A program made the translations under genes and the position numbers. Of a stretch of DNA of 64,000 nucleotides, positions 7,556 through 64,000 are shown in pieces (position 1 is the stretch's first letter; each line of letters opens with the position of its first letter). The notes under the pieces were generated by a model. That model worked only from the letters and a program-made list of their open reading frames with translations, searched no databases and was not told where the DNA came from. Origin of the DNA: Podarcis muralis (lineage: Eukaryota); assembly GCF_964188315.1 (NCBI RefSeq), contig NC_135659.1, positions 101,184,001 to 101,248,000 on the forward strand. The letters are read 5' to 3'.

Positions 7556-10000
7556 TGCCGGGAGAAGCAGAGCCCAAAGAGGCACCAATTTAGAGCACAG
7601 GAAGTCACATGGCAGAGAATCAGGCCCCCACCCACAGGGGAATTGAGGCAGGGGTCTTTCTCTTGCTCTCCCAATCTGGAGGTGCTTGAGATTTAATCCG
7701 GAGCCTCTTGCAGGGTCAACCATTGAGCTTCTCCAGTTCAGCTTGCACCATTTGGACACCAATTCCTGCCTCCCCTCCAATTGCACCTTCTGAATCGGGT
7801 TGCAAGGCTGGCCTGGCTATTTTTCCTTTTGTGGGCTGGAGTGGCCTAACTGCTCGGACATTGGGACATCAGTGTGACTCAGCCATCCTGACGGGGTCCA
7901 TAGCCTTCTCTGGGTTCAGAGAAAGCAGCAGACTCCTCTCCTGGCCACATCTTCCCAGGGCGCTCAGCTCCTCAGGTGACCTGGCAGACCCACAGAGGAA
8001 GGCCTTGAAGGGTCCCTGGAGCCCTGGGGAGTTCCAGACACGAGGTGTGGGAGGGTGTTACTTAGGAGTAGCCGGACTACAGCATGGGAAGGGCATGAGA
8101 GAGGACAGTGAAGGGCCGGGGTCCTCGTGGGTTGAGTCCCTGTGCTTCCTGCCCACCCACCCCTTTTCCTGCTTCCAAGCTGGGTCCCACAGGTTTTGCT
8201 CCTGGGGGAGGAGGGGGACCTCAGCAGTGCCCCCCCAACCCTGCCGCTAGCTGGGCTTGGCCCTCCTGCGCTTTGATGAAGGCCACATTGAAGGGGGGGG
8301 GGAGCCCTGTGTGTTTCCACAGCAGGTTGCTTCCCTCCTGCCATTGAAACCACTTATCAAAGCAGCTTCCTCAAAGAGCCTGCCTTCCTTCCTGTCGCCT
8401 CCCAGGCTTCTGATGCGACTGCAAGCACGTCTCCCAGCATGGAAGAAGCCGCAAAGGGCCGGCTCTCTGCCTTCCAGCGGCAAGTCAGCACATAAGGCTG
8501 GATCAGGCCAATGGCCCATCTACTTCTAGAAACCAGCATGGCGTCGTGGTTAGAGTGTCAGGCTAGGGCTCAGGTCAGCAGAGACTAGGGTTCAAATCCT
8601 CACTTGGCCATGAAGCTGACTGAGGGCCTGTCATTGCCCCTCAGCCTAGCCTACCTCACAAGGCTGTTGTGGGGATTACCGTATTTTTCGCTCTATAAGA
8701 CGCACCTTTCCCCTCCTAAAAAGTAAGGGAAATGTGTGTGTGTGTTATGGAGTGAATGCAGACGGGAGGCTCTGTCATGCTCCCTTTAAAGAGCCGCGTG
8801 GAGCATCTGTGCGGCTCTTGGGGGCTTTTCCCCAAGGAGGGACAAGGGATGCCCACACACACTCTGCACGCTCTTTAAAGGAAGCACAGCTCTTGGGGGA
8901 GACTTAGCCACGGGCAGTCTCTCGCGGGCAAGGGATGATGGCTCCCCTTGCCTAGGAGAGGCTGCGCGCGGCCAAGCCAGAAGCCAGGACAGCGAGCCAT
9001 CATCCCCTGCCCGTGCCCATGATATGCTGCCAGTGCCCATGATATGTTTGGGCTGGTATCGGTCTCGTGAAGTTAGCCAAAGCAAAGGGAGCAGAGACTT
9101 TGCTGGTTCCATTATGGCAGTGGTGTGTGGTCAGTGGACTGGGGGACTAGGCCAGTCCCCTAAATGTTCCCAGTAAATTAGAGTATTAAAGTATTAAAGC
9201 CTGGCGCCTCCTTCCCAGTGCCCGGGAAGCTTCTGGCTGGCTTAGGGAGGGAGGAGTGATGCTCACGCGTGCAACGTCACAGGCACGACACCGACGCCCC
9301 CATTGCCCTCGCAAGCTGGCGCCTCTGGCCCTAACTGATCCCCTACGAAAAAATTCACCGCATACCACTGCATGATAGTCCACCTGAAAGGGAGGAGATG
9401 TCATGGGGGCAAACTGGGCTGGGAAACATGAAGGGCACCAAGCGGGCAACGAATGAGAGCAAGAAAGCAGGCCAGCTCCCCAGGCCCTGCAAAGAGCATC
9501 TCTCCCTGTTCTGCTTCTTCCTCATTTTGCTGCTAACCTTAAGAGACAACCCCATCATCCCTCCCAGACTGGAGGTTGGGGCGAAAGGCGTCACTGTGCG
9601 GCTCTGCATTCCAGAGATACCGCTTTGGAGTTTTCTGTGCTGAACATCCTGTGCCTCTGAAATGCTCCCAGGCTCAGCCTCCGATACCCGCCTTTCTGCT
9701 TGGCACCCAAATGCCAGCGCAGGTCCTTGCAGGAGCGACACACCTTTCCTGTGATTCACTGCGGAGGAGGCAATGGGGTGGGAAATCTGCAGGGCTTATC
9801 TTATCCCTCTTTTCTTTCTTTTTTTGCAGCCGGGGACAAAATAAGAAAGAACAGAGCCTCCTTTGAGGGCTCTTGTAGGTCACCATTATTCCCATTTTAC
9901 ACCTGGGGATAATTAAAATGCCTATCTGCCAGATCCAATCATGGAGTTGGAAGGGAACCCCAAGAGACATCTGTGTCCAGGGCAGCTGTCTCCCAGCTCC

Positions 10001-44816: not shown

Positions 44817-47800
44817 TCAAAGAGCCCCCCTGCCGGGCTGGGCACTGGTGGCCAGTTCAGCCACACGCCAGATCTTGGGCTTGGCGGGCAGCTCCTGCGC
44901 CTCAGCAGTGGCTGGCAGAGGAGATGGAGGCAAGCCTTGCCACCGCCCGGCCTTCAGCCAAGGGGCCGCTGTTTCTGCCAGAGAGCCATTCTGGGGGAGC
45001 TTTGTCCTCGTCGGAGGGGTGCTGGGGGCTGCTCTTTCTGCGCCGGCCTCTCCCTCGCTGTCCTCCTCTTCCTCCTCCACCTCTCCCTCGGCCTTCGGGG
45101 CCCGGGGCGCCCAGCAAGCCCGGTTCTCCTTCTTGAGCCTCCGGCGGGCGTTGGCGAACCAGGTGGAGACCTGCGTCAGGCTCATCCGGCTGACGATGGC
45201 CAGCAGCACCTTCTCCCCCTTGCTGGGGTAGGGGTTCTTGGGGTGCTGGCCCAGCCAGGCCTTGAGGGCCGCCGTGCTCTCCCGGGAGGCGGCCGCCTTG
45301 CCCCGCGACGGGTCCTCGGGGGTGCCTGGCCGCAGGAGGGGCGAGTAGAGCAAGGGCGCCGGCCACAGCAGGGGGGGTCCGCCAGGCAGCTCGCAGGGGG
45401 CGGCAGAGACCTGGAGCACACAAAGGCAAGAGCAGCTGTGAGAAGCAGGAACCCCAAACAACTCCGGGTGTTGCAGGAATTTATGTATAGGTTGGGGGGG
45501 GCATTGCCCCTCCAGCAGATATCATGCACATGCAGCCCACTACCAATATCAGCACAATCACTTTTGTGATTTGTCCCCACAAAACACTCCATCACCGTTT
45601 CTTCCTATCTATTCAAAGGGCCTCTGCTGCACAATACCAAATGTAAGAATTCACTGATCAATGTATCTCTGTACTGGCTCACTGGGAAAACTTCAGAAAT
45701 TCCTATAGACATGTGAGCTCAGCTCCTCAGCAGCCCCTCTGCCTGAGGGATAATCCCTGGCATCCTGATACCTGAGTGCCAGACAGGTAGCCATTCCTGA
45801 ACTAACAAACCCAGGTGAAGACCAAAGGGTGGGATTAACTTGGCTGGGAAACAGGGAAATGTAAAGATCTCTTTTGCTCCACTTGATGGGTGTTTGGTGG
45901 AGGGCAAGGGGAACCATGGGGCAGGGTCCAGGATGCTCAGATTCCTGCCACCAGACCTCCCCTTTCATGATGTAACCATGATGTATGAGTGATGTAGTCT
46001 GGGGGGTGGGTGTAACATGGGGATTAAAAAGGTAAAGGGACCCCTGACCATTAGGTCCAGTCGTGGCCGACTCTGGGGTTGCTCATCTCGCTTTATTGGC
46101 CGAGGGAGCCGGCGTCCAGCTTCCGGGTCATGTGGCCAGCATGACTAAGCCGCTTCTGGCGAACCAGAGCAGCACACAGAAACGCCGTTTACCTTCCCGC
46201 CGGAGCAGTACCTATTTATCTACTTGCACTTTGACGTGCTTTTGAACTGCTAGGTTGGCAGGAGCAGGGACTGAGCAACGGGAGCTCACCCCATCGCAGG
46301 GATTCGAACCGCCGAACTTCTGATTGGCAAGTCCTAGGCTCTGTGGTTTAACCCACAGCACCACCTGCGTCCCACAACATGGAGATTAGCAGCTAATAAA
46401 AGTTTGGGGGCTCTTTTGTTGGGGGCTTCCATCTCCTTCCACCTTGTGGCAGGTGGGAGTCCTGTCTCGACTGTCTTCAATCAAGACCAAGCCTACTGGC
46501 TGCTGTTTTGCTCTGGTATTCCTGGCTGGTGTCCTTGTTTTTGGTCCAAGGGAGCCCTCAGATTTCTCCGTTAACAGGGAAATGTTGGCTCCTCCAGTCT
46601 GCTCTGGCCCCCTGCATACTCCCCCACATTTCGGGAGGGCAAATTGGGGCACACCCGCACCATCCTGCCACCCCTGTCACTTGCCTGCTCAGCCCCAAGA
46701 CCACTGCCCACCCAGCCCCTCCCTTACCTGCCTGCCCCCTTCACCTGCTGCCTCCTGCCGCTGCCACTGCAGCCTCCCAGAGGTGTTTTGGTCCCACCCT
46801 TTGATGATTCCCAAAGCGATCCCGGAAGGCTCTCTGGTGCTCGCCAGCACAACCCTGCTGACTCGCGCCAGGGTGCCCGTCTTAAACAGGACATTCCGGG
46901 ATCCAAGGCAAAGCCAGAATTGGCTTTTGTGATCCGGGATGCCCTGCTTAAAACAGGACACTTGTCCCTGCTAGAGGAAAGAAGCATGCCTGGATGCAGG
47001 CTGAGTCAACGACAGAAGCCTGTACAGAAGAAAGAGACAGAAATTGAAGTGTGCTTGAAATGTGGCCCATGCAATGGAAACCTGCTCCACCCTGAAAGCA
47101 AAGGCAAGCAGAGAAAGGTTGTGGCATATGGGACGTTTTGGAGAAAAGGCATGATGGAAATTAATGGATGCTTTCTCTGCCCTCCTGAGTGGGGGTCCAT
47201 CTGTCCTGGAGGGCATCCCTCTCCCCCTAAAGGATGTGGGGTGCTCTTGGGTCCAGCCTTGCCACTGGGGCTGCAGCTGCCCTCAAGGACCTCGGGGTCC
47301 TTTCATCAACTTTGACCTCTGCACCAACCCTGGCTCTACCAGGACAGAGTTTGTTCTGGTTATTCACACTCTGGGCCCCTCCTGCTTGAGTGGGGCGGGC
47401 AGAGCTTTGCGGATGGTGCTGCCACATTTGCTGAGGTCGAGAGGCGGGCACTGTGCCCCCAAGGGGCTTTGCTTCTTCAGCTCTGCTGCCTCCTCTTGTT
47501 TTCTGCTGCTATTTTTAGTCCCATCCCAGCGTTTCTCCTGCCTCCCAGAAAAGGCCCCTTCCCTGTCTGGTTGAGAAGCCACCACAAGGACTCCCGCTCT
47601 GCAGATATTTTTAAACATCTCCAGACCAGAGAGAGGAGCGCCTGTCATGCAGCCCAGGGCTGGGAGGAGCGGGCTTGAGCTGCGTCGATGCCAGCCTGCC
47701 CACTGTGCCAGGCTGTGTACGTTTGCCATCCTGCGTTTCTTCTTGCCACAAGGGTGGCTTGCCTCCTCCTATAGCCCCTCAAATCATAGCTGTCAACTTT

Positions 47801-52938: not shown

Positions 52939-55342
52939 CTAGCGAGAGAACTTGCGCACGGCCCGGTAGCTGCCTGGGGGCGCCAGGCGCTGGGGGGTCT
53001 CCTGGGGCTCCTCTTCCTCCTCCTCTTCCGCCAAGTCGTTGGCTGAGCCCCATCTGCGCTGCGCTGGGTGGATGGTCCTGGGCAGGAGGAGGCAAGCCAG
53101 CTTCCGGTTCCTGCTCCGCTCCCCCCGGATCGGGCTCAGCTCTGGGGAGACACCAGCAGACCCCCCAGGGGGGCACGCTCACACAGATGGCAGAGTTGGA
53201 AGGGACCACCAAGGGTCATCTAGTCCAGTGTTTCCCAACCACTGTTCCGCGGCACACTAGTGTGCCGCGAGATGTTGCCTGGTGTGCCGCGGGAAAAATT
53301 AAAAAATTGAAAGATTTTTTTTTTTAAAGTCAAATTTTCGATTGGGGCGCCGTCACTAGATGACCCCTGGGGTTCCCTCCCTCCCTCCCGCTCTGCGCCT
53401 CCCTCCTCCTCCTCCTCCTCCGGGGAGGCCCTTCCTGGCTCTCGGCCAAGGCTTGGCGGCTGCCACTCACTCACTCGCTCGCCCACCCGTCCCTCCATTC
53501 CTGCACCCGGCCTCTCCCCCTCCGTCCCCGGCGCGGGGGCTGCCGGGATCCGTAGTCCCCTCGCCCTTGGGCTCCGCGCCCGCGCGGGGTGCGCAAACTA
53601 CGTTTCCCAGCGTGGCCTGGCGGGCCGGGCGTTTTGTTTGAAGTGCTCTTCTCCCGGCCATGGAATGAGCGCGGCGGCGGCGGCCGGGCGGGCAGGGGCT
53701 CTTCCGCGCAGACCCCGCGCAGCCTGCCTGCGCCCCCGCGGAGATCGGGCGGCAGGATGGAGGCCGGGGATCCCCACGGAGGCGGAGCGGCGGAGGCTGC
53801 CCCCCAGGTAGGGCTGCGTCGGGGTTTTTTTATTTTTGCAATGCTGCATCCACGCCGGAGGGGACGCATCGGACTGCGGGGAGACCCCTTGGCGGGCGTG
53901 CAAGGCAATGCATGCGTGCAGGCGTTGCATGGAGTGCAGTGCAATGCAATGGCAACGCGGCGCCCTGCATGCATGGATGCAACTTCCACCGGCGCTCCGG
54001 ACTTGGCAGGTGAGGGGGGTCCCCAGTGGGCGGCAGAGAGAGCCGGGAGGGCAAAGGGGAGCCGGGGAGGAGCAGCGCTGCTCCCCGAGCCGAGCCCGGG
54101 GGGAAACTTCGGCGTCGTTGCGCCGGGTGTTGGAAGCGGAGGCTGGCGGGGGCCCCTCACCTGCAAAACCTGGTCGCCTCTCATATATTTCGTGCATTGC
54201 ATTCATCGCCCGCTTTCTCCTCCAAGGAGCTCCCGGGGGCGCGCGTGGTTCTCCCCGTGTTATCCTCGCAACAACAGCCCTGCGAGGTGGGTCAGGCGAG
54301 TGGCACAAGGGAGCACCCAGGGATTGTCCTGGCCAGGTGGGGTGATTTGAACCCTGCTCTCTGCCCGGTCTTCGTCCTCATTTAGCCCTCACATGTGCAT
54401 GACTGTGCATGACTGAGGTTTTCCCCCCTCGTCTTGGCTATGGTGTGAGTCTGTGCTGTTAATTAATGGGGTTCTGCCTTCAGAGAAGATGAGCCAGGCA
54501 TCAAGGAGGTGATTATGTAATTTGCTAGCAATTCATGTCCCTCCCGGTGTGACGCTGCGCGCTGACGTCACGGGGCTGTAATGGTGGTGTGCCTCGAGAT
54601 TTTTTTCATGAAACAAGTGTGCCTTTGCCCAAAAAAGGTTGGGAAACACTGATCTAGTCCAACCCCACGTCCCTCCCCTCTCCCCAGAGGCCCTTCCGCC
54701 AGACAACCTAGAAGCTCTGGGAAGGGGGCTGCAAGCAAATCCCCTTTAGGGTCCCTTCCCCTCTTCCACATGCAAACAGGGAGCAGAAAGGGACCCCTCC
54801 CCACATATCTATGGGACCGCCTCTCCTGGTCTGCCCCACGGAGGACCTTAAGGTCCATGAATAACCATAGTTGAGAGGTCCCGGGCCCTAAGGAAGTCAG
54901 ACTATCCTCCACCAGGGGCAGGGCCTTTTCAGTGATGGCTCCGACCTGGTGGAATGCTCTGTCCCAGGAGACCAGGGACCTTCAGAATTTAACCTCCTTC
55001 CGCCGCGCCTGTAAGACAGAGCTATTCCGCCTGGCCTTTAATCTGAATTCAGCCTGATCTTTTCTTCCCCTTCCCTCCCTTTTTATGAAGATTACCTGCT
55101 CTGAGACCCCACAGCTAATTCTCTCCTGGTCTCCTCGCTGGCCCAAGTAGGACCAATTCAGCCAGCTAGCCCTGGGGATAATCTAATGCTTATTTCCCCT
55201 AAATTGATTTTTGAATTTTATTGTTATTCATGTTTTTATACTGTATTTTATGCTGCTTTTATAATTGTTTTAAAGTGTTTTAAATTTGTTGTTAGCTACC
55301 CTGAGCCCGGTTTTCGAACCGGGAAGGGTAGGGTATTAAAAA

Positions 55343-55386
<44 letters not shown>

Positions 55387-56346
55387 GAACATTCGCAGAG
55401 CCTGGCTGTCAGATGCTCCCAACGGGAAGACAACAATCAGGATTCGAACCCAAGAGCCACACTCTCCCCTCCTGTGTTTCCGGCAGCTGTGAAGCAGGAG
55501 CATCGCTGCCTGCTCCACCTCTGTGAATTTGTCCCATCCTCTTTCAAAGCCATCCCTGCTTCCTGTGGCAGGGAGTTCCGCAGTCTAACCCGGCGCTCCA
55601 CGTGAAGGACTTCCTTTGGCCCGTCCTGAACCTGCCCTCCCAGGCCGCCCTCCCTGTGGAGGCGCACGCAAAGGCAAGAAGGGGGGGGGCGCTGTTCTTA
55701 CGGGGTGGGGTGGGGGCTCCCTCCGGGGTCTCCACGCAGAGGTAGTGCTTGGCCAGGCGGCCACTGTAATCCCGCACGTCCTGGTTGGCACCTGTGGGGC
55801 GACAGGGAGCTGAGGTGCCATCGGGGAGGAAGAAGCCGCCCTTAAAGAGGGCCGACCCCTTTGGCAGGGAGGGAGGGAGGGGCGTGGATGATGTGGGGGG
55901 GGGCATGTCTTCCTCACCGTGGGTCCAGATGAGCAACTCCATCAGCCGCCGGTGGCCGTGTAGGGCAGCAATGTGCAGGGGGGTGTAGCCCTGGTTGGGG
56001 GGCAGAAGGAGGAAGAACAGGCCCTGAAGCACCTGACTCTGAAACTACCAGACCCCCCCCCAACCCCCCCAAAACGCGCTTTGCCCAGTGCCCCCTTGCC
56101 CTCTGGCACCAAGATGCCTGCACACAGCATGGAGACCTAATACTTTATGGGGAGTGGGGGGCGCCCCACCCGCCACCCAGACCCTCCCACCCCTGGGGTC
56201 TCCAGCAACCCTCCAGCAGGCTCTGCTCTCGGGGGCCTTGCTCACCCCCAAAGCGATGCCCCCCCAGGTCCAGCACCTCTGAATACTCACCCCCTGTGTG
56301 TGTTGCAGGAGAAAAGGGGCAGGAGGGTGGAGGAGAAGGAAGGATG

Positions 56347-56378
<32 letters not shown>

Positions 56379-59300
56379 TAGATAGATAAATAAATAAATA
56401 GATAAAATAATTAATAAAATAATATTATACCCTGCCCATCTGGCTGGGTTTGTGCAACTGGTTGTGCAACTGTGGTGCCCCCCACCCTGCTCCCACTTGG
56501 GCCCCCATGTTAAGGGGAGCAGCTCCACGCTGAAGCTGCAATTCCAGCCCTGGATGGTGCAGGACGCCCCCCCCCCCCAAAAAAACCACACCTATGGTGT
56601 TGCCCTTGTCTACTCACAGGGTCTACTCACATGCTTCGTGCAGAGGGGTCAGCATGGGAGGAGGAAGAAGGGGACATTTAGGGGAACCCCGAACACCTCC
56701 TCTCTCCCCAGGATTCGGGGGGGGGGCAAGCCCGCCTTGCTGCGCAGCCCCCTTCTCCCAGCCCTGCAAGGGACTCACCGCTCGCATGTTGACGTCGGCC
56801 CCGGCCCCCAGGAGGAGGGTCACCAGCTCCTCCTTGCCGTGCTTTGCTGCCCAGTGGAGGGCTGTCTGGGGGGAGAGCGCAGGGGGGTCACCGGGGGGAG
56901 CCTTCCTCCCCCCACCCAGCAAGAAAGAGGCAGCCCCCCTTCTGCCCACCCACTGAACCTCCCAGGAGCAGGAAAGGACGGAGGCTTGCTTCACACACAT
57001 CAGAAGAGCCTCCGGATCAGGCCCCAGGACCCTCTTCTCACAGGAGCCAACCAGAGTGTGGGGGGTCAGGTGGGATTGCTATGAGGAATTATGAAAAATG
57101 CAGCAAGCCATGGTGTCCGCGATGAAAGCATTGCTTGACTGGGCTTGAGTCACTGGCAATAATTTCTGATCAAATCCCACAAGCCTCTGCATCTCTGCCC
57201 CATTTTCTCCACCTGACAGGCATGTATAAGCATTCTGAAACACAGACCAGTTGCTTCACCATTCATCCTGGGCCAGAAAGATAGGAGGTAGATGTTGTTA
57301 ATCTTTAGGTAGATCTTAAGGGCCAGGAAGAGAGTTCACAAGGAGATGGTAAACACTATCTTTCCTTGCCTGTCCTTCCTTTCCTATTTACTGCCTGTTT
57401 ATGACCTCTGGGGTTTGCTAAATGCATTCCTCCTTGATTCCTGTTTTATGCATGCTCAAAGTAGTTATTTGCAGGATTTCTCTGATCTGACTTTGTCCCA
57501 TGTGGTAATTTTTTGAAATGCTCACAGGAAATCTGATTGGTTCGTACAAGTGCTGTGTAAGAGTTCTTTTAAGAGTTAATAAAACGGTTTGGACGAAGGA
57601 GTGGCTATTGGCCCTTCCTCCCAGAGTCTTGCTGGCCAAGCCTGGTGTGTATTTTATTAATCAGGGTCCAATCCTTCCTTTGCCTTCGGAACGCAACACA
57701 GGGGCCCGTCAGGGGAACCCCACAAGCAGTGCTCTCTCCTGCAGAGCCCTCCTCACTAGGAGCCCTTGAAAGCCCTCCGGTCCTCCCTGCCTTGCAGGCC
57801 TTTTCAGGGGCCTGGACTGACTCCAACTGCAAAAGCTGGGCTGGGCTGGGCTTGGGGTTTTTCTGCTGGCGGACAGTTGCTGCTTTGTATCTTTATTTTA
57901 GATATTACGATTTATGTGAAGATTGTTTAACTTGGTTGTGCACTTTTTGATATTTTATTTTTTGTTCATGACTACTTCTGCCATGTTTGTATTTCCGTCC
58001 CCCATCCCCCCCCCCTTGTAAGCCGTCTTGAGCACAGTTCTAACTATGGAAAGGTGGCATGCAAATAAAATGTGCCATATCGGTGAGCGGCTTACACTTA
58101 ATCCAGTGGGAGGGAGTTCCATAGTTTAACTCCACAATGTGAGATGAAGGATTCTGGGGAGGAGAAGGGGGCATTTAGGGGTAAGGGGAGGAAATCAGTA
58201 GTTGGGACCAAATACTTACAAACTGTGTCAGGTCAGGCAGCAGCAGCAGCAGCAGCAACCGTGGGAGAGAAGAAGAGTCATTAAAATCCCCACCCAGGAG
58301 AGACTCCAGTTCCCAGGGAGAACCTCCCCCCCCCCAAAAAAAAAGACGGTGGGAGGCTGTGGGGTGGGGGGGGGTCACAAGCAGAGAGCACCCCAAACCG
58401 AAAGAGGGGCAGTGTGCCAGGCAGGTGGGTGGCATTGGCGCTGGGTCTCAGAGACAGTGCCCATCAGGAAGGCAGACAGCCTGAGGCAGAAGGGACCCCC
58501 CCCCCAGAGCTACGCCAAGGCGACCTGACCCACGTGGGTCTAGACTTACCCCCTGAGCAGAGCGGGAGGAGAAGGGACAGGCGGCAGATTTGGCAATGGG
58601 GGAGGGAAACAGAGAGAAGGGAGCGTTAGAGCCACGCGGTGCATCCTGAAGCCCTCTGAACATGTGCAGAGTGTCACACCCACAGCCGGCACTCACGCAC
58701 CCGGGGCTGCAGTAGGGATCCCCCCCGATGGCTGGGAGGGTGGGGGGCAGAAACATTACAAGGGGATTTGGGCCCCCCTTCCACAAAGGACCCCAAGAGG
58801 AGGAAGATGTGGAGGCCCAACATGACCCTGCCGGGAGTCACAGGCTTAGAATTAAAGCACAAAGCGCCCCCCCCCTGTCTGCAATGGAGACCCCATTCCA
58901 GGGGGGAGCACCTGCCTGAACGGGGCCCCGTCTGCCAGGCTCACCCCCCCCCCCAGGCCTCAGCCCCCTTCCTGACCAGGTGAGACATGGTGGCTGGGGG
59001 GCAGCTGACCCAATTCTGCACTCTCCAGGTGAGGGAGGGCTGGCTGGCGGATCCAGGACCGCCGGCAATGTCTGGGCAACACAATGACCATGTACATATG
59101 CAATAAACGATCTTTTATAGAATTCCTTCAAACCATAACATTGCTGACGTTCTCGTTGCAACACAGGGGCTGGTTTGATCCAGGACCGCGGCTGCTTCTT
59201 TCCAAAGCTCCTTTTGTGTGGGCTCAGCCCCCCGAGAAGTCTTGGGCTCCCAAAGAAGAACATGAGAAGAGGCTGCAGGATCAGACCAGTGGCCCACCTG

Positions 59301-61498
59301 GTCCAGCATCCTCTTCTCACAGGGCAATCTACCCGGAAGAGAATTGTATTTGGAGGAGATAGCGCTCTAAGGTGGTTCCCTTCCTGCCTCTGTTTGCTTC
59401 CCCTCTCTATCTCTTGTTCAGCTCTTGGATGGCTGAAGAACAGCCTTTTAGTGCCCTAATCTGTAAGAAGGGAAGGAAGTGATATTGCTGGGTAGCTGCT
59501 TCTGATGTTAGACATTGTTTAAAGAAAGTAAGGCACTGAGAGAGGTGGCTAATGAATAATCTGTACATAGCTGGTAGCATGTAAGCAGTCAGGCAAGCCA
59601 CACAGGTTAACAGGTTAAAGGTAAAGGTACCCCTGCCCGTACGGGCCAGTCTTGACAGACTCTAGGGTTGTGCGCCCATCTCACTTAAGAGGCCGGGGGC
59701 CAGCGCTGTCCGGAGACACTTCTGGGTCACGTGGCCAGCGTGACAAAGCTGCATCTGGCGAGCCAGCGCAGCACACGGAAACGCCGTTTACCATCCCGCT
59801 GGTAAGCGGTCCCTATTTATCTACTTGCACCCGGGGGTGCTTTCGAACTGCTAGGTTGGCAGGCGCTGGGACCGAACGACGGGAGCGCACCCCGCCGCGG
59901 GGATTCGAACCGCCGACCTTTTGATCGGCAAGCCCTAGGCGCTGGGGCTTTTACCCACAGCGCCACCCACGTCCCATGCTAACAGGTTAGCTATCTATAA
60001 ATCGGAAGGTTTGGGTGGAGTTATTAGAAGCTCCTGCACGGACTGATTGATCGCAGGGCCCTGCAAACTGAGGCTCCCTGGGGGAGTCCCTTCGCCGCTT
60101 CTTGAGGGCTTCCCTGTGGCAGATCCAAGTGCTTGCTTGGTAATGTATGCAATGCTTGCTGTTTAGAAGAAAATCTTTAATCTTCTCACTCACTTGTGTT
60201 TGTCTGAATCTCATTGTAAAAGAACCGCCTGGCATTGGGCAAGACAGCCAGCCAGGCGCCCCTTGTGGGTCTGAGCCCCAGAGTACAAGATCAAGGACAG
60301 CGTTCACACTCACCGAGGTGAAATCCTGGAAGCAGCAGCCGGAGCGTCACGGGAGGGAGAGAAAAGAGGGGCTCAAGTCAGCACCCGGAGGGTGGCAAGC
60401 GCAAGGGAGCCCCTTCAGATGCAGGGAGATCCTAGAGGCAGACTGGGGTTTTTCCAATTTCAGCAGTGCCCTGTGCAGAACCCATTGACCCCGACCCCTG
60501 TCTCTTCCCTTCTGCTCAATTCATTACAGCAGAGTTGCAACGCCCTGCAGTGCCCCCCAGACTCAGCACCCAGAGCAGGGACGCTGGCGGAGGAAGAGGT
60601 GTGCGGGGGGAGCGCACCGCCCCCGGCAGCACGATCCCGGCGGTGTGCCATTGTTGCTGCTTCCCTGCCCACGCTGGGTGCCATGCCCCTATGGGGGGAA
60701 CCACACCCCCAAGACGCATGCCACACCCTTATGGGCGGTGTGCCATGCCCCCAGGACACACGCCATGCCCCCAGGATGCGCACCGGCCCCGCCCCGCCTG
60801 CTCTCTGCCCCCTGGTGCCAGAGCATGAAACTCTGCCACTGCGCAGGGGAACCGGTTGCGCTGCCCTAAATCCGCCTCTGGCACCCCCACCCCCCCCCCA
60901 ATCTAGCAGCAGGCCCTCCTTGGCAGAGGGAGGGGATGCTGGATGCCCAGGGCAGTTCTGCCCCTTCCTTGCAGGCCTCTGGACTCTCCCAGGCAGCGAG
61001 AACCAGCCGGCCTCAAGTCTTGCTCTCTTGCTGGGCTCTCCTGCCCTTGGAACCAGCCGGGGCTGGCCAAGTCGGGCACTGGCTCCGAGGGGCCCAGCCG
61101 CCGGGCGATCTTACCTTCTTGGAGGCGAGGGTGGGGTCCTGCTGGAGTAGGTGGCTGAGGGTGGCCACGTGGCCCCCGGCCGCTGCCTGCAGCCACTCCT
61201 TCTCCAGGGGCTCCAGCTGCAAGGAGAAAGACCCTCTCTCAGTCTCCCCACTGAGGCTCATTTCTTACGTTTTCTGTATGTTTTGACTGTGTTGCCTTTA
61301 TGGATTTGTGTTGTGAGTCGTTGTCTTAATCCAATAGTCCCCCTTCTTGCAGGATCTCCACCAGCCCCACACAGAGTCCCCTGTCTTCTCCCCAGAAGTA
61401 CCTGACCCCTTTCTGGCCCCATCACTCACCGCCACTGGGCTGGAGACCCCCGGGCCACTTCCACCCCCGTCGTCTGCGGCGTCTCGGTCCGACTGGGG
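52939..61498 (-). CDS. SOWAH: Intron-rich Sowah (sosondowah/ANKRD43 family) ankyrin-repeat protein; at least 11 coding exons; 5' part unresolved
   Basis: Exons 61498-61430, 61216-61115, 60325-60314, 58552-58550, 58222-58220, 56865-56779, 56633-56631, 56293-56291, 55990-55918, 55791-55702, 53141-52939. Spliced product: ..PVA|LEPLEKEWLQAAAGGHVATLSHLLQQDPTLASKK|DFTS|G|F|TALHWAAKHGKEELVTLLLGAGADVNMRA|H|G|GYTPLHIAALHGHRRLMELLIWTHG|ANQDVRDYSGRLAKHYL..|..RWGSANDLAEEEEEEE..RKFSR*. Matches the Sowah signature LEPLE.EW...DF.SGFTALHWAAK.G...N.RSHGGYTPLH.AALHGH...VRDYSG. The last exon is less certain. Confidence 0.9.
53226..54651. mobile_element. 1.43-kb non-autonomous hAT element with a CpG-rich interior in the last Sowah intron
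   Basis: Perfect 15-bp TIRs CAGTGTTTCCCAACC / GGTTGGGAAACACTG and perfect 8-bp TSD ATCTAGTC (53218-25 and 54652-59), splitting a minus-strand CR1 tail. Confidence 0.88.
54905..55385 (+). mobile_element. L2-like LINE 3' end with (TTA)n tail
   Basis: RAFSVMAPTWWNAL-like decayed frame; tail similar to the copy at about 4360-4640. Confidence 0.65.
59618..59979 (+). mobile_element. Full-length Sauria/POM SINE in a Sowah intron
   Basis: Head AAGGTAAAGGTACCCCTGCCCGTACGGG; 10-bp TSD TAACAGGTTA (59608-17 and 59980-89). Confidence 0.9.
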
Positions 61499-62807: not shown

Positions 62808-64000
62808 TGGATGCTTTAGTTGAGATGCCTGCATTTCAGGGGGTTGGACTAGATGACCCTTGGGGTCCCTTCCAACTCTACCATTCTATAGTTTGGGGCC
62901 TTTGGCAACATGCAACCTCTGATTTAGTGTCTTGGCAGAGCAAGCGGCCATCCTCACCCCACAGTTCTGAGGCAAGCCCACCGCAACTCCTTCTCCAGCT
63001 ACCCAATTTCGGTTCCGGAGCACTAGCAGCCCCAGAGGCCCCAGGAAACCTACCGGTGCCCCATCATCGCAGACAGTGACCAGGATCTGAGGGGCTGACA
63101 TGTCTCGCCAGCACGGAGACTCTCAGGAGTACCACAGCGACTGGACGGCTGGACAGATGTCCCGCTGGGGGCTGGTCTTCTGTGCCCCCTCCCACTTTGG
63201 AGCAGTCGCCACAGGAAGACGCTTCTCCTGCAAAACAAAACAGCTTTTCTAGCAAGACCCTCTTAGCTGTCCCCGGGCACAAATTTCCTATGCAGTTAAG
63301 ACCCCCGGCTCTCTTCCCTGTATTGACATTTATTTCAATACTTCATTTGTGGATTATGGGGATTTCTACCTAATCAGGGTGTTATACAAAGCAAAACAAA
63401 CAAACAAACAAACAAATTGTGCCAGAATGTGGCATCTGGGAACTCAAGGTCCTTAGACCGCTGATGCAGGTGTTCATCTGTTTTTAGTCTATGGCTGCTT
63501 TAACTTTCTAAAAGTTTCAAATTATTGTTTTTTGTTTTTTCCCCTAATTGATAATTTTATCATTTTCTTGTGAACTGCTTTGAGCTTTTCTTTTCCAACT
63601 GAGCATTGTACAGACAAGCTAAATAAAAAATAGAAAGAAGGCTGAGAGGGTTCACAAGTGCACGTGTGAATTAGGCGCCATGGATTAAGCACCATGGATG
63701 GGATAATCAGAAGGGGGGGGGGGGAGAGAGAAGGAAGTCGCCTCCTTCAGTGCAGCATCCTGTTTTTGTCAGCAGCGGATGAGGAGGAGGGCAGGGGCCA
63801 CCACAGCTCAGTTGCAAAGCATCCATCTCTGCTTGCAGGAGGCCTGGGACTCAACCCCCAATGGCAGCATGTCCAGGGAGGGGGGGGGAGACCCCTGCCT
63901 CCCACCCCCCACTGCCAGTCATTAGACAAAGGACTGACTTTCTACAAGGCAGCGTTTTACGTTCTCATTGCTTCGCCCCTTTACTCAGAATAATGAGGAC

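What the first reader, a model, noticed from the sequence alone, without database searches (positions are those of the whole stretch)
56291..60325. Sowah ankyrin beta-hairpins built from four 3-nt microexons and one 12-nt microexon
Seen in sequence (minus strand): TTCCAG|GATTTCACCTCG|GTGAGT (60325-60314, DFTS); CTGCTCAG|GGG|GTAAGT (58552-58550, G); CTGACACAG|TTT|GTAAGT (58222-58220, F); CACGAAG|CAT|GTGAGT (56633-56631, H); CACACAG|GGG|GTGAGT (56293-56291, G). Each has a pyrimidine or branch-like region, AG and a consensus donor. The large exons alone give SKK..TALHW and VNMRA..GYTPLH, missing residues of the Sowah consensus. The five microexons occur in the right genomic order and fill both gaps exactly: DFTSGFTALHW and VNMRAHGGYTPLH. 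Four single-codon exons that are all correct in identity and order are very unlikely by chance. All are phase 0, so any subset can be skipped in frame (up to 32 isoforms), editing only the beta-hairpin loops that form ankyrin binding surfaces (established ankyrin structure). Standard gene predictors and read mappers usually miss 3-nt exons, so this is probably misannotated. I cannot tell whether it has been reported for fish or invertebrate Sowah.
Basis: partly seen in the sequence, partly recalled or inferred. Interest (0 to 1): 0.95.

Follow-up and report, generated by a model that had tools for sequence, protein, structure and literature searches.

The report
Single-codon exons in lizard Sowah gene
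A small ankyrin-repeat gene (the Iroquois-linked Sowah gene) in this wall-lizard window has one 12-base exon and four 3-base exons that are conserved from tuna to birds, but lizard RNA shows only three of the five spliced in, and public annotations handle them inconsistently.

Summary
All five AG-exon-GTRAGT islands are at the stated minus-strand coordinates. Four of the only eight AG-NNN-GTRAGT sites on that strand of the 64-kb window are the claimed ones.

They are real, ancient coding microexons. The same five islands occur in the same order, with only synonymous codon changes, in Lacerta, Phrynocephalus, leatherback turtle, tufted duck, spotted gar and yellowfin tuna. Tuna, duck, goose and swan mRNA assemblies contain all five.

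Reads and contigs give KK-DFTS-F-TALHW and MRA-G-GYTPLH. So the 12-nt exon, the Phe codon and the second Gly codon are spliced in. The first Gly (58552-58550) and the His (56633-56631) are absent. The second Gly is skipped in one run. The Phe codon is TTC in RNA but TTT in the window.

RefSeq Podarcis muralis isoforms X2-X5 already carry the three used microexons. Other models (UniProt, newer RefSeq, other species) are wrong at exactly these junctions.

The gene is the intron-bearing Sowah gene next to an Iroquois homeobox gene. I found no paper describing these microexons. It is an extreme but recognisable case of microexon splicing.

The parts
63054..63101 (-). Coding exon 1 (start codon; MSAPQILVTVCDDGAP); donor gtaggt
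   Evidence: tblastn of P0151/P0153, 100% identity; splice check
61430..61498 (-). Coding exon 2 (69 nt, PQSDRD...SPVA), phase 0
61115..61216 (-). Coding exon 3 (102 nt, LEPLEKEW...ASKK), first degenerate ankyrin repeat; donor AAG|gtaaga
   Evidence: RNA depth and joints
60314..60325 (-). 12-nt microexon GATTTCACCTCG (DFTS). Spliced into Podarcis mRNA.
   Evidence: Letters between joint 56865->61114 in the X4 contig and X23 reads, and in the X10 contig. Conserved in 7 other species.
58550..58552 (-). 3-nt microexon GGG (Gly, 'G1'). Conserved island; NOT seen in the Podarcis RNA sampled.
   Evidence: Motif. GGG in all 7 other species. Included in tuna, duck, goose and swan mRNAs and in Sceloporus RefSeq isoforms. 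Absent from Podarcis joints.
58220..58222 (-). 3-nt microexon TTT (Phe). Spliced into Podarcis mRNA, where it reads TTC.
   Evidence: mRNA ..TCG|TTC|ACA... No AG-TTC-GT exists anywhere in the intron. The Lacerta orthologous island is TTC. TTT in the other species.
56779..56865 (-). 87-nt exon (TALHWAAKHG...VNMRA), ankyrin repeat 2 without its first two residues
   Evidence: Pfam Ank match starts at profile position 3
56631..56633 (-). 3-nt microexon CAT (His). Conserved island with a weak AAG acceptor in lizards; NOT seen in the Podarcis RNA sampled.
   Evidence: CAT or CAC in all 7 other species. Included in tuna, duck, goose and swan mRNAs and in one turtle mRNA. Absent from Podarcis joints.
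56291..56293 (-). 3-nt microexon GGG (Gly, 'G2'). Alternatively spliced in Podarcis.
   Evidence: Joint 55991->56778 with one extra letter gives GCG|GGG|GGC in 14 X23 reads and the X4 contig. The X10 contig joins 56779 directly to 55990. The codon is GGG, GGT, GGC or GGA across species.
55918..55990 (-). 73-nt exon (GYTPLHIAALHGH...WTHG), ankyrin repeat 3
55702..55791 (-). 90-nt exon (ANQDVRDYSG...PTPP)
   Evidence: joint 55788->55915 in all four runs
52939..53141 (-). Last coding exon (..LSPIRGERS...RKFSR, stop)
   Evidence: The 12-exon model gives a 231-aa ORF. Without G1 and His it is 229 aa, the length of RefSeq isoform X4, from which it differs at 3 residues.
58048..58153 (-). Alternative exon. 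The acceptor ccccag|AATCC is joined directly to the 12-nt microexon in one run. It lies in repeat-like sequence and, by my reading, has an in-frame stop.
   Evidence: X10 contig, joint 58154->61114 with 10 letters between

Best explanation
**What it is.** The window carries, on its minus strand, the intron-bearing Sowah ankyrin gene that lies beside an Iroquois homeobox gene. It encodes about 230 aa. The loops before helix 1 of ankyrin repeats 2 and 3 are encoded by five consecutive microexons: 12 nt (DFTS), 3 nt (Gly), 3 nt (Phe), then the 87-nt exon, then 3 nt (His) and 3 nt (Gly). This layout dates back at least to the common ancestor of ray-finned fishes and tetrapods.

**How it is spliced.**
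- Shown: every microexon has a canonical AG acceptor behind a pyrimidine tract, and 29 of 30 donors across six species are GTRAGT.
- Shown: UGC motifs are about twice as frequent as expected just upstream of the acceptors.
- Inferred: a 3-nt exon cannot be recognised across the exon, so the flanking short introns (145-1761 nt here) are probably removed one after another by intron definition. The strong donors and upstream UGC enhancers would help. UGC enhancers are the element type used by SRRM3/SRRM4-dependent microexons.

**What it does to the protein.**
- Shown: all five microexons are phase 0.
- Inferred from phase 0 and the fold model: each adds or removes whole residues in the inter-repeat loops without touching the helices.

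**Inclusion by lineage.** In fish and waterfowl mRNAs all five are included. In Podarcis the transcripts sampled include the 12-nt, Phe and second Gly exons (the last optionally) and skip the first Gly and the His. So inclusion depends on lineage and probably on tissue.
For: - Motifs and rarity.
- Podarcis RNA: (X4 contig and X23 raw reads give KK-DFTS-F-TALHW and MRA-G-GYTPLH; X10 skips G2).
- Strandedness of X23 fits a minus-strand gene.
- Tuna mRNA contigs L003/L004 mapped on tuna genomic L002 place all five as unique AG..GT islands.
- The same five islands are in Lacerta, Phrynocephalus, Dermochelys, Lepisosteus and Aythya.
- Only synonymous variation: Gly GGG/GGT/GGC/GGA, His CAT/CAC, Phe TTT/TTC.
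- dN/dS for the ankyrin region is about 0.13-0.25 in comparisons not saturated at synonymous sites.
- All 13 transcript-derived teleost proteins and 4 duck, goose or swan transcript proteins read DFTSGFTALHW and HGGYTPLH.
- 29 of 30 donors are GTRAGT. UGC count upstream is 56, against 25-31 expected; 0 of 5000 resamplings reached it.
- AlphaFold model of the duck orthologue: DFTS lies in the loop at 130-135, and G136/F137 start helix 136-146. H167/G168 lie in the stretch between helices 149-157 and 172-179, where DSSP calls a 3-residue turn at 167-169 and confidence is lower (block mean pLDDT 64).
- Iroquois-class homeobox exon 7.5 kb downstream on the same strand.
Against: - G1 and His were not seen in any Podarcis read or contig examined, nor in any lacertid RefSeq isoform. 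Their use in this species is unproven.
- The tissues of the coded runs are unknown, and only four runs could be laid.
- The window's Phe codon (TTT) differs from the RNA (TTC). I attribute this to a T/C polymorphism without a DNA check.
- The UGC enrichment counts six species that are not independent (two are lacertids), and it is only a correlate of SRRM3/4 control.
- The order of intron removal is inferred, not observed.
Confidence: 0.85

Rival explanations
1. All five microexons are normally included, and the main protein reads DFTSGFTALHW and MRAHGGYTPLH.
For: All five islands have intact, strong splice signals in Podarcis and Lacerta. Fish and waterfowl mRNAs include all five. Sceloporus RefSeq isoforms include G1.
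Against: Raw reads (X23: 5-7 and 14 junction reads) and contigs (X4) from two studies contain exactly 15 and 3 extra bases. That leaves no room for G1 or His. P. muralis and L. agilis RefSeq isoforms also lack both. The lizard His acceptor is AAG rather than CAG.
Confidence: 0.1
2. In lacertids the first Gly and the His islands are recently retired relics. They were microexons in the ancestor but are no longer spliced, and they look intact only because too little time has passed.
For: No RNA or annotation support exists in either lacertid. Podarcis and Lacerta introns are still 78-88% identical throughout, so identity of the islands between these two species proves little. The His acceptor is weak (AAG). 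Podarcis also has a duplicated donor segment after CAT.
Against: Podarcis introns cannot be aligned with those of Phrynocephalus, turtle, gar or tuna. Yet both islands keep AG, the correct codon and GTRAGT in every lineage, including both lacertids. UGC motifs and pyrimidine tracts are also retained. This implies selection along most of the lacertid branch.
Confidence: 0.3
3. The AG-NNN-GT sites are chance motifs. The extra codons in mRNAs come from shifted donors or acceptors of the large exons, or from indel polymorphism.
For: AG-NNN-GT without further constraint is common (about 210 per strand in the window). MicroExonator notes that spurious 3-nt matches are a real problem (PMC7821500).
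Against: The bases next to the large exons are gtaaga, cag, gtgagt and cag. Shifted sites cannot give GGG or TTY. Strict sites are rare and 4 of 8 are these. In Phrynocephalus the strict scan finds no other 3-nt candidates in the two introns. Order, codon identity and synonymous-only change hold in 8 species.
Confidence: 0.01

Closest known systems
Vertebrate microexons of 3-27 nt, including the SRRM3/SRRM4 (eMIC)-dependent neural and retinal programme (Irimia et al. 2014, cited in PMC6314551; MicroExonator, PMC7821500)
   Same: Tiny, in-frame, deeply conserved exons with strong splice sites and UGC-rich sequence upstream of the acceptor. They add one to a few residues to surface loops of interaction domains. 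Aligners and annotators often miss them.
   Different: Here five microexons, four of them single codons, sit next to one another within about 33 codons of one domain. In fish and waterfowl mRNAs they look constitutive. Neural specificity and SRRM3/4 dependence were not tested.
Cytohesin-1/2/3 3-nt GGG microexon (diglycine/triglycine switch; PMC6314551)
   Same: A conserved 3-nt exon adds a single glycine to a binding loop, and its skipping is a functional switch. G2 here is likewise a 3-nt Gly exon that is alternatively skipped, giving AGG or AG before YTPLH.
   Different: That case is a PH domain, a single microexon and a proven change in lipid specificity. Here no ligand or functional difference is known.
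Genes with several neighbouring microexons: RPS24 (3, 18, 22 nt; PMC12686416, PMC12207440) and conserved plant microexon clusters (PMC8831610)
   Same: Runs of microexons in one gene. There is widespread misannotation of microexons of 15 nt or less, deep conservation of the gene structure and GTRAGT donors. Intronless copies arise by reverse transcription.
   Different: RPS24's microexons lie at the C-terminal/3' end. The plant 'clusters' are families of homologous microexons across species, and the one adjacent pair I read about is 5 + 12 nt. No case of four 3-nt exons in one domain turned up in my searches.
Iroquois-Sowah genomic regulatory block (Maeso et al. 2012, Genome Res 22:642; seen only through summaries in PMC5803294, PMC8793726, PMC12311624)
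   Same: An intron-bearing Sowah gene lies directly beside an Iroquois-class homeobox gene. In the window the homeobox exon at 45410-44820 is 7.5 kb from Sowah's last exon.
   Different: The summaries say the parental Sowah was pseudogenised or lost in tetrapods and replaced by retrogenes. Here it is intact, spliced, expressed and under purifying selection in a lizard. Intact coding exons and microexon islands are also found in a turtle and a duck, and annotated orthologues exist in tuatara and a caecilian (not checked at the DNA level). The sauropsid proteins carry no N-terminal WHD_SOWAH hit in the precomputed Pfam lists, whereas the fish orthologues do.

Membership tests
Microexon (internal exon of 30 nt or less that is spliced into mRNA) | Canonical acceptor AG and donor GT directly flanking a segment of 30 nt or less inside an intron | tested here: met
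   All five sites in the window and in 7 other species
Microexon (internal exon of 30 nt or less that is spliced into mRNA) | The segment is present in mature RNA of this species between the flanking exons: 12-nt, Phe, Gly-2 | tested here: met
   15 extra bases (GATTTCACCTCG+TTC) and 3 extra bases (GGG) at the two junctions, in raw reads and contigs. RefSeq X2-X5 agree.
Microexon (internal exon of 30 nt or less that is spliced into mRNA) | The segment is present in mature RNA of this species: Gly-1 (58552-58550) and His (56633-56631) | tested here: not met
   Absent from all junction reads and contigs in 4 runs and from lacertid RefSeq isoforms. It is met in orthologues: tuna, duck, goose and swan mRNAs for both; one turtle mRNA for both; Sceloporus RefSeq models for Gly-1. 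Tissues were not sampled systematically.
Microexon (internal exon of 30 nt or less that is spliced into mRNA) | Evolutionary conservation of position, frame and encoded residue | tested here: met
   Same order and phase in 8 species. Only synonymous codon changes in the 3-nt exons; the 12-nt exon has one T-to-I replacement in the turtle.
SRRM3/SRRM4 (eMIC)-dependent microexons | UGC-containing enhancer close upstream of the 3' splice site | tested here: met
   56 TGC in the 40 nt upstream of 30 sites, against 24.8 (random intronic) or 30.7 (pyrimidine-rich AG control); 0 of 5000 resamplings reached it. A (TGC)7 run lies before the Phe exon.
SRRM3/SRRM4 (eMIC)-dependent microexons | Neural, retinal or endocrine-enriched inclusion, and loss of inclusion without SRRM3/4 | not testable with these tools
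   Run tissues are coded and no perturbation data exist.
Sowah (sosondowah) ankyrin family | Ankyrin repeats with the ..DF..GFT.LHWAAKHG.. and ..GGYT.LH.AA.HGH.. signature, and names and similarity to Sowah proteins | tested here: met
   Pfam Ank hits. Homologues are named SOWAHA/B/C/D(-like) by NCBI and UniProt. Invariant columns in A1.
Sowah (sosondowah) ankyrin family | N-terminal SOWAHA-C winged-helix domain (PF25877) | tested here: not met
   The domain is precomputed on the fish orthologues but not on the lizard, turtle or bird proteins. The lizard protein starts 38 residues before the ankyrin region. My own hmmscan copy did not report PF25877 even for tuna, so this rests on the precomputed column.
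Parental (Iroquois-linked, intron-bearing) Sowah rather than a Sowah retrogene | Introns in the coding region and physical linkage to an Iroquois-class homeobox gene | tested here: met
   12 coding exons. Homeobox_KN exon at 45410-44820 on the same strand. A RefSeq read-through model fuses the two genes (P0182).

The most novel reading that the evidence does not exclude
This may be the densest known run of minimal exons in an animal gene: four single-codon exons plus a 12-nt exon within one ankyrin domain, kept for over 400 million years. On this reading it works as a combinatorial, SRRM3/4-tuned code that sets the length of two ankyrin loops residue by residue in a tissue- and lineage-specific way. 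It would sit in a parental Iroquois-linked Sowah gene that, contrary to the published summary of 'loss in tetrapods', is still alive in sauropsids.
Probability: 0.3. Interest if true: 0.75.

Novelty: new member of a known kind. Interest (0 to 1): 0.6.

Why it matters
- **Model for minimal exon recognition.** Five neighbouring microexons, four at the 3-nt minimum, have natural variation in inclusion between lineages: all five in fish and ducks, three in lacertids. The bird introns are compact (90-436 nt) and would suit minigenes.
- **Annotation.** This is a clear, checkable example of what 3-nt exons do to annotation. Across more than 170 database proteins the models disagree at exactly two junctions, showing read-through 'VS' from GTGAGT, added 'Q' from CAG, and missing G, F or H.
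- **Gene history.** The parental Iroquois-linked Sowah gene is retained and expressed in sauropsids. This qualifies the textbook 'retrogene replacement in tetrapods' account.
- **Protein function.** No function can yet be assigned to the loop variants.

Tried and rejected
- **The search of protein representatives** with the 162-aa ORF spanning exon C, its intron and exon D. The result was swamped by generic multi-ankyrin proteins, and no Sowah protein was evident among the best 150. The single job was wasted.
- **Literature.** No paper holds 'sowah' together with 'microexon', and none describes tandem 3-nt exons in ankyrin repeats. Maeso et al. 2012 could not be read by DOI or PMC id, so whether it mentions Sowah's tiny exons is unknown.
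- **The look-up of encoding contigs** failed for non-longest isoforms (Mauremys X8, Cygnus X2, Anas X5, Microcaecilia X2). There is therefore no amphibian locus.
- **BLAST of Podarcis introns against distant species**. Only the large exons align, so there are no extended conserved intronic blocks around the microexons. Podarcis versus Lacerta aligns everywhere (78-88%) and so cannot discriminate.
- **Search for an AG-TTC-GT site** to explain the RNA's TTC: none. I settled on a T/C difference at 58220, supported by Lacerta's TTC.
- **Shifted splice sites or NAGNAG** as the source of the extra codons: rejected, because the neighbouring bases do not fit.
- **Not attempted:** invertebrate or cartilaginous-fish Sowah gene structures, and the retrogene paralogues. 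The homologue search lists only the best 120 hits, all of them orthologues.
Full report
**1. The observation**

Reading the minus strand confirms every motif at the stated coordinates:
- a 12-nt segment GATTTCACCTCG between ttccag and gtgagt (60325-60314);
- GGG between ctcag and gtaagt (58552-58550);
- TTT between cacag and gtaagt (58222-58220);
- CAT between cgaag and gtgagt (56633-56631);
- GGG between cacag and gtgagt (56293-56291).

All junctions are phase 0.

The motifs are not chance. A scan of the whole window finds only 8 AG-NNN-GTRAGT sites on the minus strand and 3 on the plus strand. Four of the 8 are the claimed ones, each behind a pyrimidine-rich tract. From the density of the other 7 sites, about 0.28 are expected in the two introns. 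Requiring the correct codons in the correct order brings the chance probability to roughly 1e-10 (my estimate).

**2. The gene**

- Annotated relatives were found with the ORF that spans the GYTPLH exon. They are small proteins named 'SOWAHA/B/C/D-like' from Podarcis muralis, Lacerta agilis, Zootoca, tuatara, turtles, a caecilian and fishes.
- tblastn of these proteins on the window gives the full minus-strand gene: start codon at 63101, exons at 61498-61430 and 61216-61115, the five microexons around the 87-nt exon, exons at 55990-55918 and 55791-55702, and a last exon at 53141-52939 ending RKFSR.
- With all five microexons the ORF is 231 aa, with canonical AG/GT at every junction.
- The window agrees with P. 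muralis proteins apart from a few allelic substitutions. Three of the differences seen in run X23 are positions where the older P. muralis models differ from the window.
- An Iroquois-class homeobox exon lies at 45410-44820 on the same strand, 7.5 kb downstream of the last exon. One RefSeq model even fuses the two genes (P0182).
- This is therefore the intron-bearing, Iroquois-linked Sowah gene of the Iroquois-Sowah regulatory block (Maeso et al. 2012, known to me only through PMC5803294, PMC8793726 and PMC12311624).

**3. RNA evidence in this species**

One read-laying run was allowed. I laid three RNA contig sets (X10, X4, X26) and one raw-read RNA run (X23) on window 55650-61300.

- Depth sits on the exons, and X23's strandedness fits a minus-strand transcript.
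- **Junction 61115 to 56865.** The X4 contig and X23 reads carry 14 letters between the sides, plus one base the aligner placed on the intron. In mRNA sense this reads AAGAAG|GATTTCACCTCG|TTC|ACAGCC, that is KK-DFTS-F-TALHW. The 12-nt exon and one Phe codon are spliced in. The GGG at 58552-58550 is not.
- **The Phe codon.** It is TTC in the RNA and TTT in the window. No AG-TTC-GT exists anywhere in the intron, and the orthologous Lacerta island is TTC. I read this as a T/C difference at 58220. This is inferred and was not checked in DNA.
- **Junction 56779 to 55990.** Fourteen X23 reads and the X4 contig carry exactly three extra G, giving GCG|GGG|GGC, that is MRA-G-GYTPLH. The neighbouring intron bases are gtgagt and cag, so the GGG must come from the island at 56293-56291. 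There is no room for CAT.
- **Skipping.** The X10 contig joins 56779 directly to 55990, so the second Gly is skipped there.
- **An alternative exon.** X10 also joins the 12-nt exon to an alternative acceptor at 58153.

These isoforms are the ones RefSeq lists for P. muralis: X2-X5 read DFTSFTALHW with AGGYTPLH or AGYTPLH. My 229-aa splice of the window has the length of X4 and differs from it at 3 residues.

**4. Evidence that all five are real exons**

- **Tuna.** Two independent RNA assemblies (L003, L004) encode DFTSGFTALHW and HGGYTPLH. Mapping the mRNA on tuna genomic DNA (L002) leaves 12+3+3 and 3+3 bases unplaced. Each of these has a single AG..GT match in the right intron and order: GACTTCACCTCA, GGG, TTT, CAT, GGG.
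- **Other species.** A uniform scan finds the same five islands in Lacerta, Phrynocephalus, Dermochelys, Lepisosteus and Aythya. In Phrynocephalus no other 3-nt candidate exists in the two introns.
- **Codon variation.**

| Microexon | Codons seen across 8 species |
|---|---|
| Gly-1 | GGG in all |
| Phe | TTT, TTC |
| His | CAT, CAC |
| Gly-2 | GGG, GGT, GGC, GGA |
| 12-nt | third-position changes, plus one T-to-I in the turtle |

- **Invariance.** Spliced together, the segments read KDF(T/I)SGFTALHWAAKHG and HGGYTPLHIAALHGH in all eight species. dN/dS for the region is about 0.13-0.25 in comparisons not saturated at synonymous sites.
- **Introns.** Outside the islands, Podarcis introns do not align with any of these species except its close relative Lacerta.
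- **Transcript-derived proteins.** All 13 from teleosts and 4 from ducks, geese or swans include all five. One turtle transcript has G1, Phe and His but a single Gly before YTPLH.

The layout is therefore at least as old as the bony-vertebrate ancestor.

**5. Annotation**

Across more than 170 retrieved proteins the models disagree at exactly these two junctions.
- At the first junction: DFTSGF, DFTSF, DFTSG, DFTS, and DFTSVS (GTGAGT read as Val-Ser).
- At the second junction: HGG, HG, GG, G, VSG and QGG.

The UniProt P. muralis model (P0151) reads DFTSVS and AQG. The newer RefSeq product (P0152) is a 128-aa fragment. The Phrynocephalus model lacks all five. However, RefSeq X2-X5 of P. muralis already contain the three microexons that the RNA supports.

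**6. How it probably works**

Shown:
- 29 of 30 donors across six species are GTRAGT, often GTRAGTAT.
- 24 of 30 acceptors are CAG. The lizard His acceptor is the weaker AAG.
- UGC is about twofold enriched in the 40 nt upstream of the acceptors: 56 observed against 25-31 expected, and 0 of 5000 resamplings reached it. A (UGC)7 run followed by CUGAC branch-point-like repeats precedes the Phe exon.

Inferred, from general knowledge of microexon splicing that I recalled and did not check here:
- A 3-nt exon cannot hold acceptor- and donor-bound factors at the same time. The short flanking introns are therefore presumably removed sequentially by intron definition.
- Near-perfect U1 pairing and upstream UGC enhancers of the SRRM3/SRRM4 type would assist this.
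- Weak points, such as the AAG acceptor of His in lizards, would make particular exons skippable.

At the protein level:
- The Pfam Ank profile starts at position 3 on the 87-nt exon alone. G1 and Phe supply positions 1-2.
- In an AlphaFold model of the duck orthologue (ankyrin region pLDDT mostly 81-93), DFTS lies in the loop at 130-135 and G136/F137 begin helix 136-146.
- H167/G168 lie in the stretch between helices 149-157 and 172-179. DSSP calls a 3-residue turn at 167-169 there, and confidence is lower (block mean pLDDT 64).

Skipping therefore changes loop length by single residues and leaves the helices intact. What these loops bind is unknown.

**7. What remains open for the window**

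G1 and His are intact in Podarcis but unseen in its RNA. There are two readings.
- They are included only in tissues not sampled. This is favoured by their retention in every lineage although the introns have otherwise diverged beyond alignment.
- Lacertids retired them recently. This cannot be excluded, because Podarcis and Lacerta are too similar for their shared islands to prove selection.

I put about 0.3 on the second reading.

**8. Comparison with what is known, and novelty**

- Three-nucleotide microexons are known. The cytohesin GGG exon is a close functional analogue for a one-glycine loop switch (PMC6314551).
- Genes with several microexons are known (RPS24).
- Conserved, widely misannotated tiny microexons are documented in plants (PMC8831610).
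- Aligners are known to fail below 8-10 nt (PMC7821500).
- I found no paper mentioning Sowah microexons or a run of single-codon exons, but I could not read Maeso et al. 2012.

I therefore file this as a new and extreme member of a known kind. It is partly captured already by RefSeq isoforms.

A side result is that the parental Iroquois-linked Sowah gene is alive in sauropsids. The sauropsid proteins carry no N-terminal winged-helix hit in the precomputed Pfam lists, unlike the fish orthologues. Secondary sources describe this gene as lost in tetrapods.

Noticed in passing
window 44820-45410 (minus strand): An Iroquois-class (TALE, Homeobox_KN) homeobox exon lies 7.5 kb downstream of Sowah's last exon. 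The ancient Iroquois-Sowah linkage is therefore retained in this lizard, with an expressed, intact Sowah. Summaries of Maeso et al. 2012 say the parental Sowah was lost in tetrapods. A RefSeq model (P0182) fuses the two genes.
   Followed up: partly
window 58048-58153 (minus strand): In run X10 the 12-nt microexon is spliced to an alternative acceptor (ccccag|AATCC), just downstream of the Phe microexon. The exon lies in repeat-like sequence and, by my reading, has an in-frame stop. It is likely an exonised repeat giving a truncated or unstable isoform.
   Followed up: partly
window 58220: The last base of the Phe microexon is T in the window (TTT). RNA from two studies reads TTC, as does the Lacerta genome. 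This is probably a synonymous T/C polymorphism at the -1 position of the donor.
   Followed up: partly
window 59617-59975 (intron between the 12-nt and Gly-1 microexons): A repeat element with tRNA-like sequence has summed RNA word depth above 50,000 and hundreds of loose read ends. This expression comes from many other copies in the genome. It inflated the 'share of words' of RNA runs in the first run search.
   Followed up: no
window 56600-56630 (just downstream of the His microexon): Podarcis has the donor segment twice (gtgagtagac cct gtgagtagac), whereas Lacerta has it once. The second donor lies 13 nt downstream of the first. Its use would shift the frame.
   Followed up: no
window 53141-53155: RefSeq isoforms ending ..PTPPR-VSPELSP need an acceptor at about 53153 that is preceded by TG in the window. 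The ..PTPPQ-LSP isoforms use the canonical AG before 53141. The longer form may rest on a non-canonical site or on a sequence difference between assemblies.
   Followed up: no
orthologue proteins: Fish orthologues carry the N-terminal WHD_SOWAH domain (PF25877, precomputed). Lizard, turtle and bird proteins show no such hit and start shortly before the ankyrin repeats. The sauropsid gene is a truncated version of the parental Sowah.
   Followed up: partly
L008 (Aythya fuligula) 7959-9599: In the duck the same eight exons, from exon 3 to the GYTPLH exon, span only about 1.6 kb, with introns of 90-436 nt. No Iroquois gene is annotated within 9 kb. The annotated neighbours are a RING-finger gene and a gene with WW and PCIF1_WW domains.
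   Followed up: no
window 56340-56430 and 55340-55385: There is a (CTAT)n/(TTTA)n microsatellite inside the intron between the His and Gly-2 microexons, and an (ATA)n run after the exon at 55791-55702. The read-laying tool skipped 56331-56437 as a repeat.
   Followed up: no
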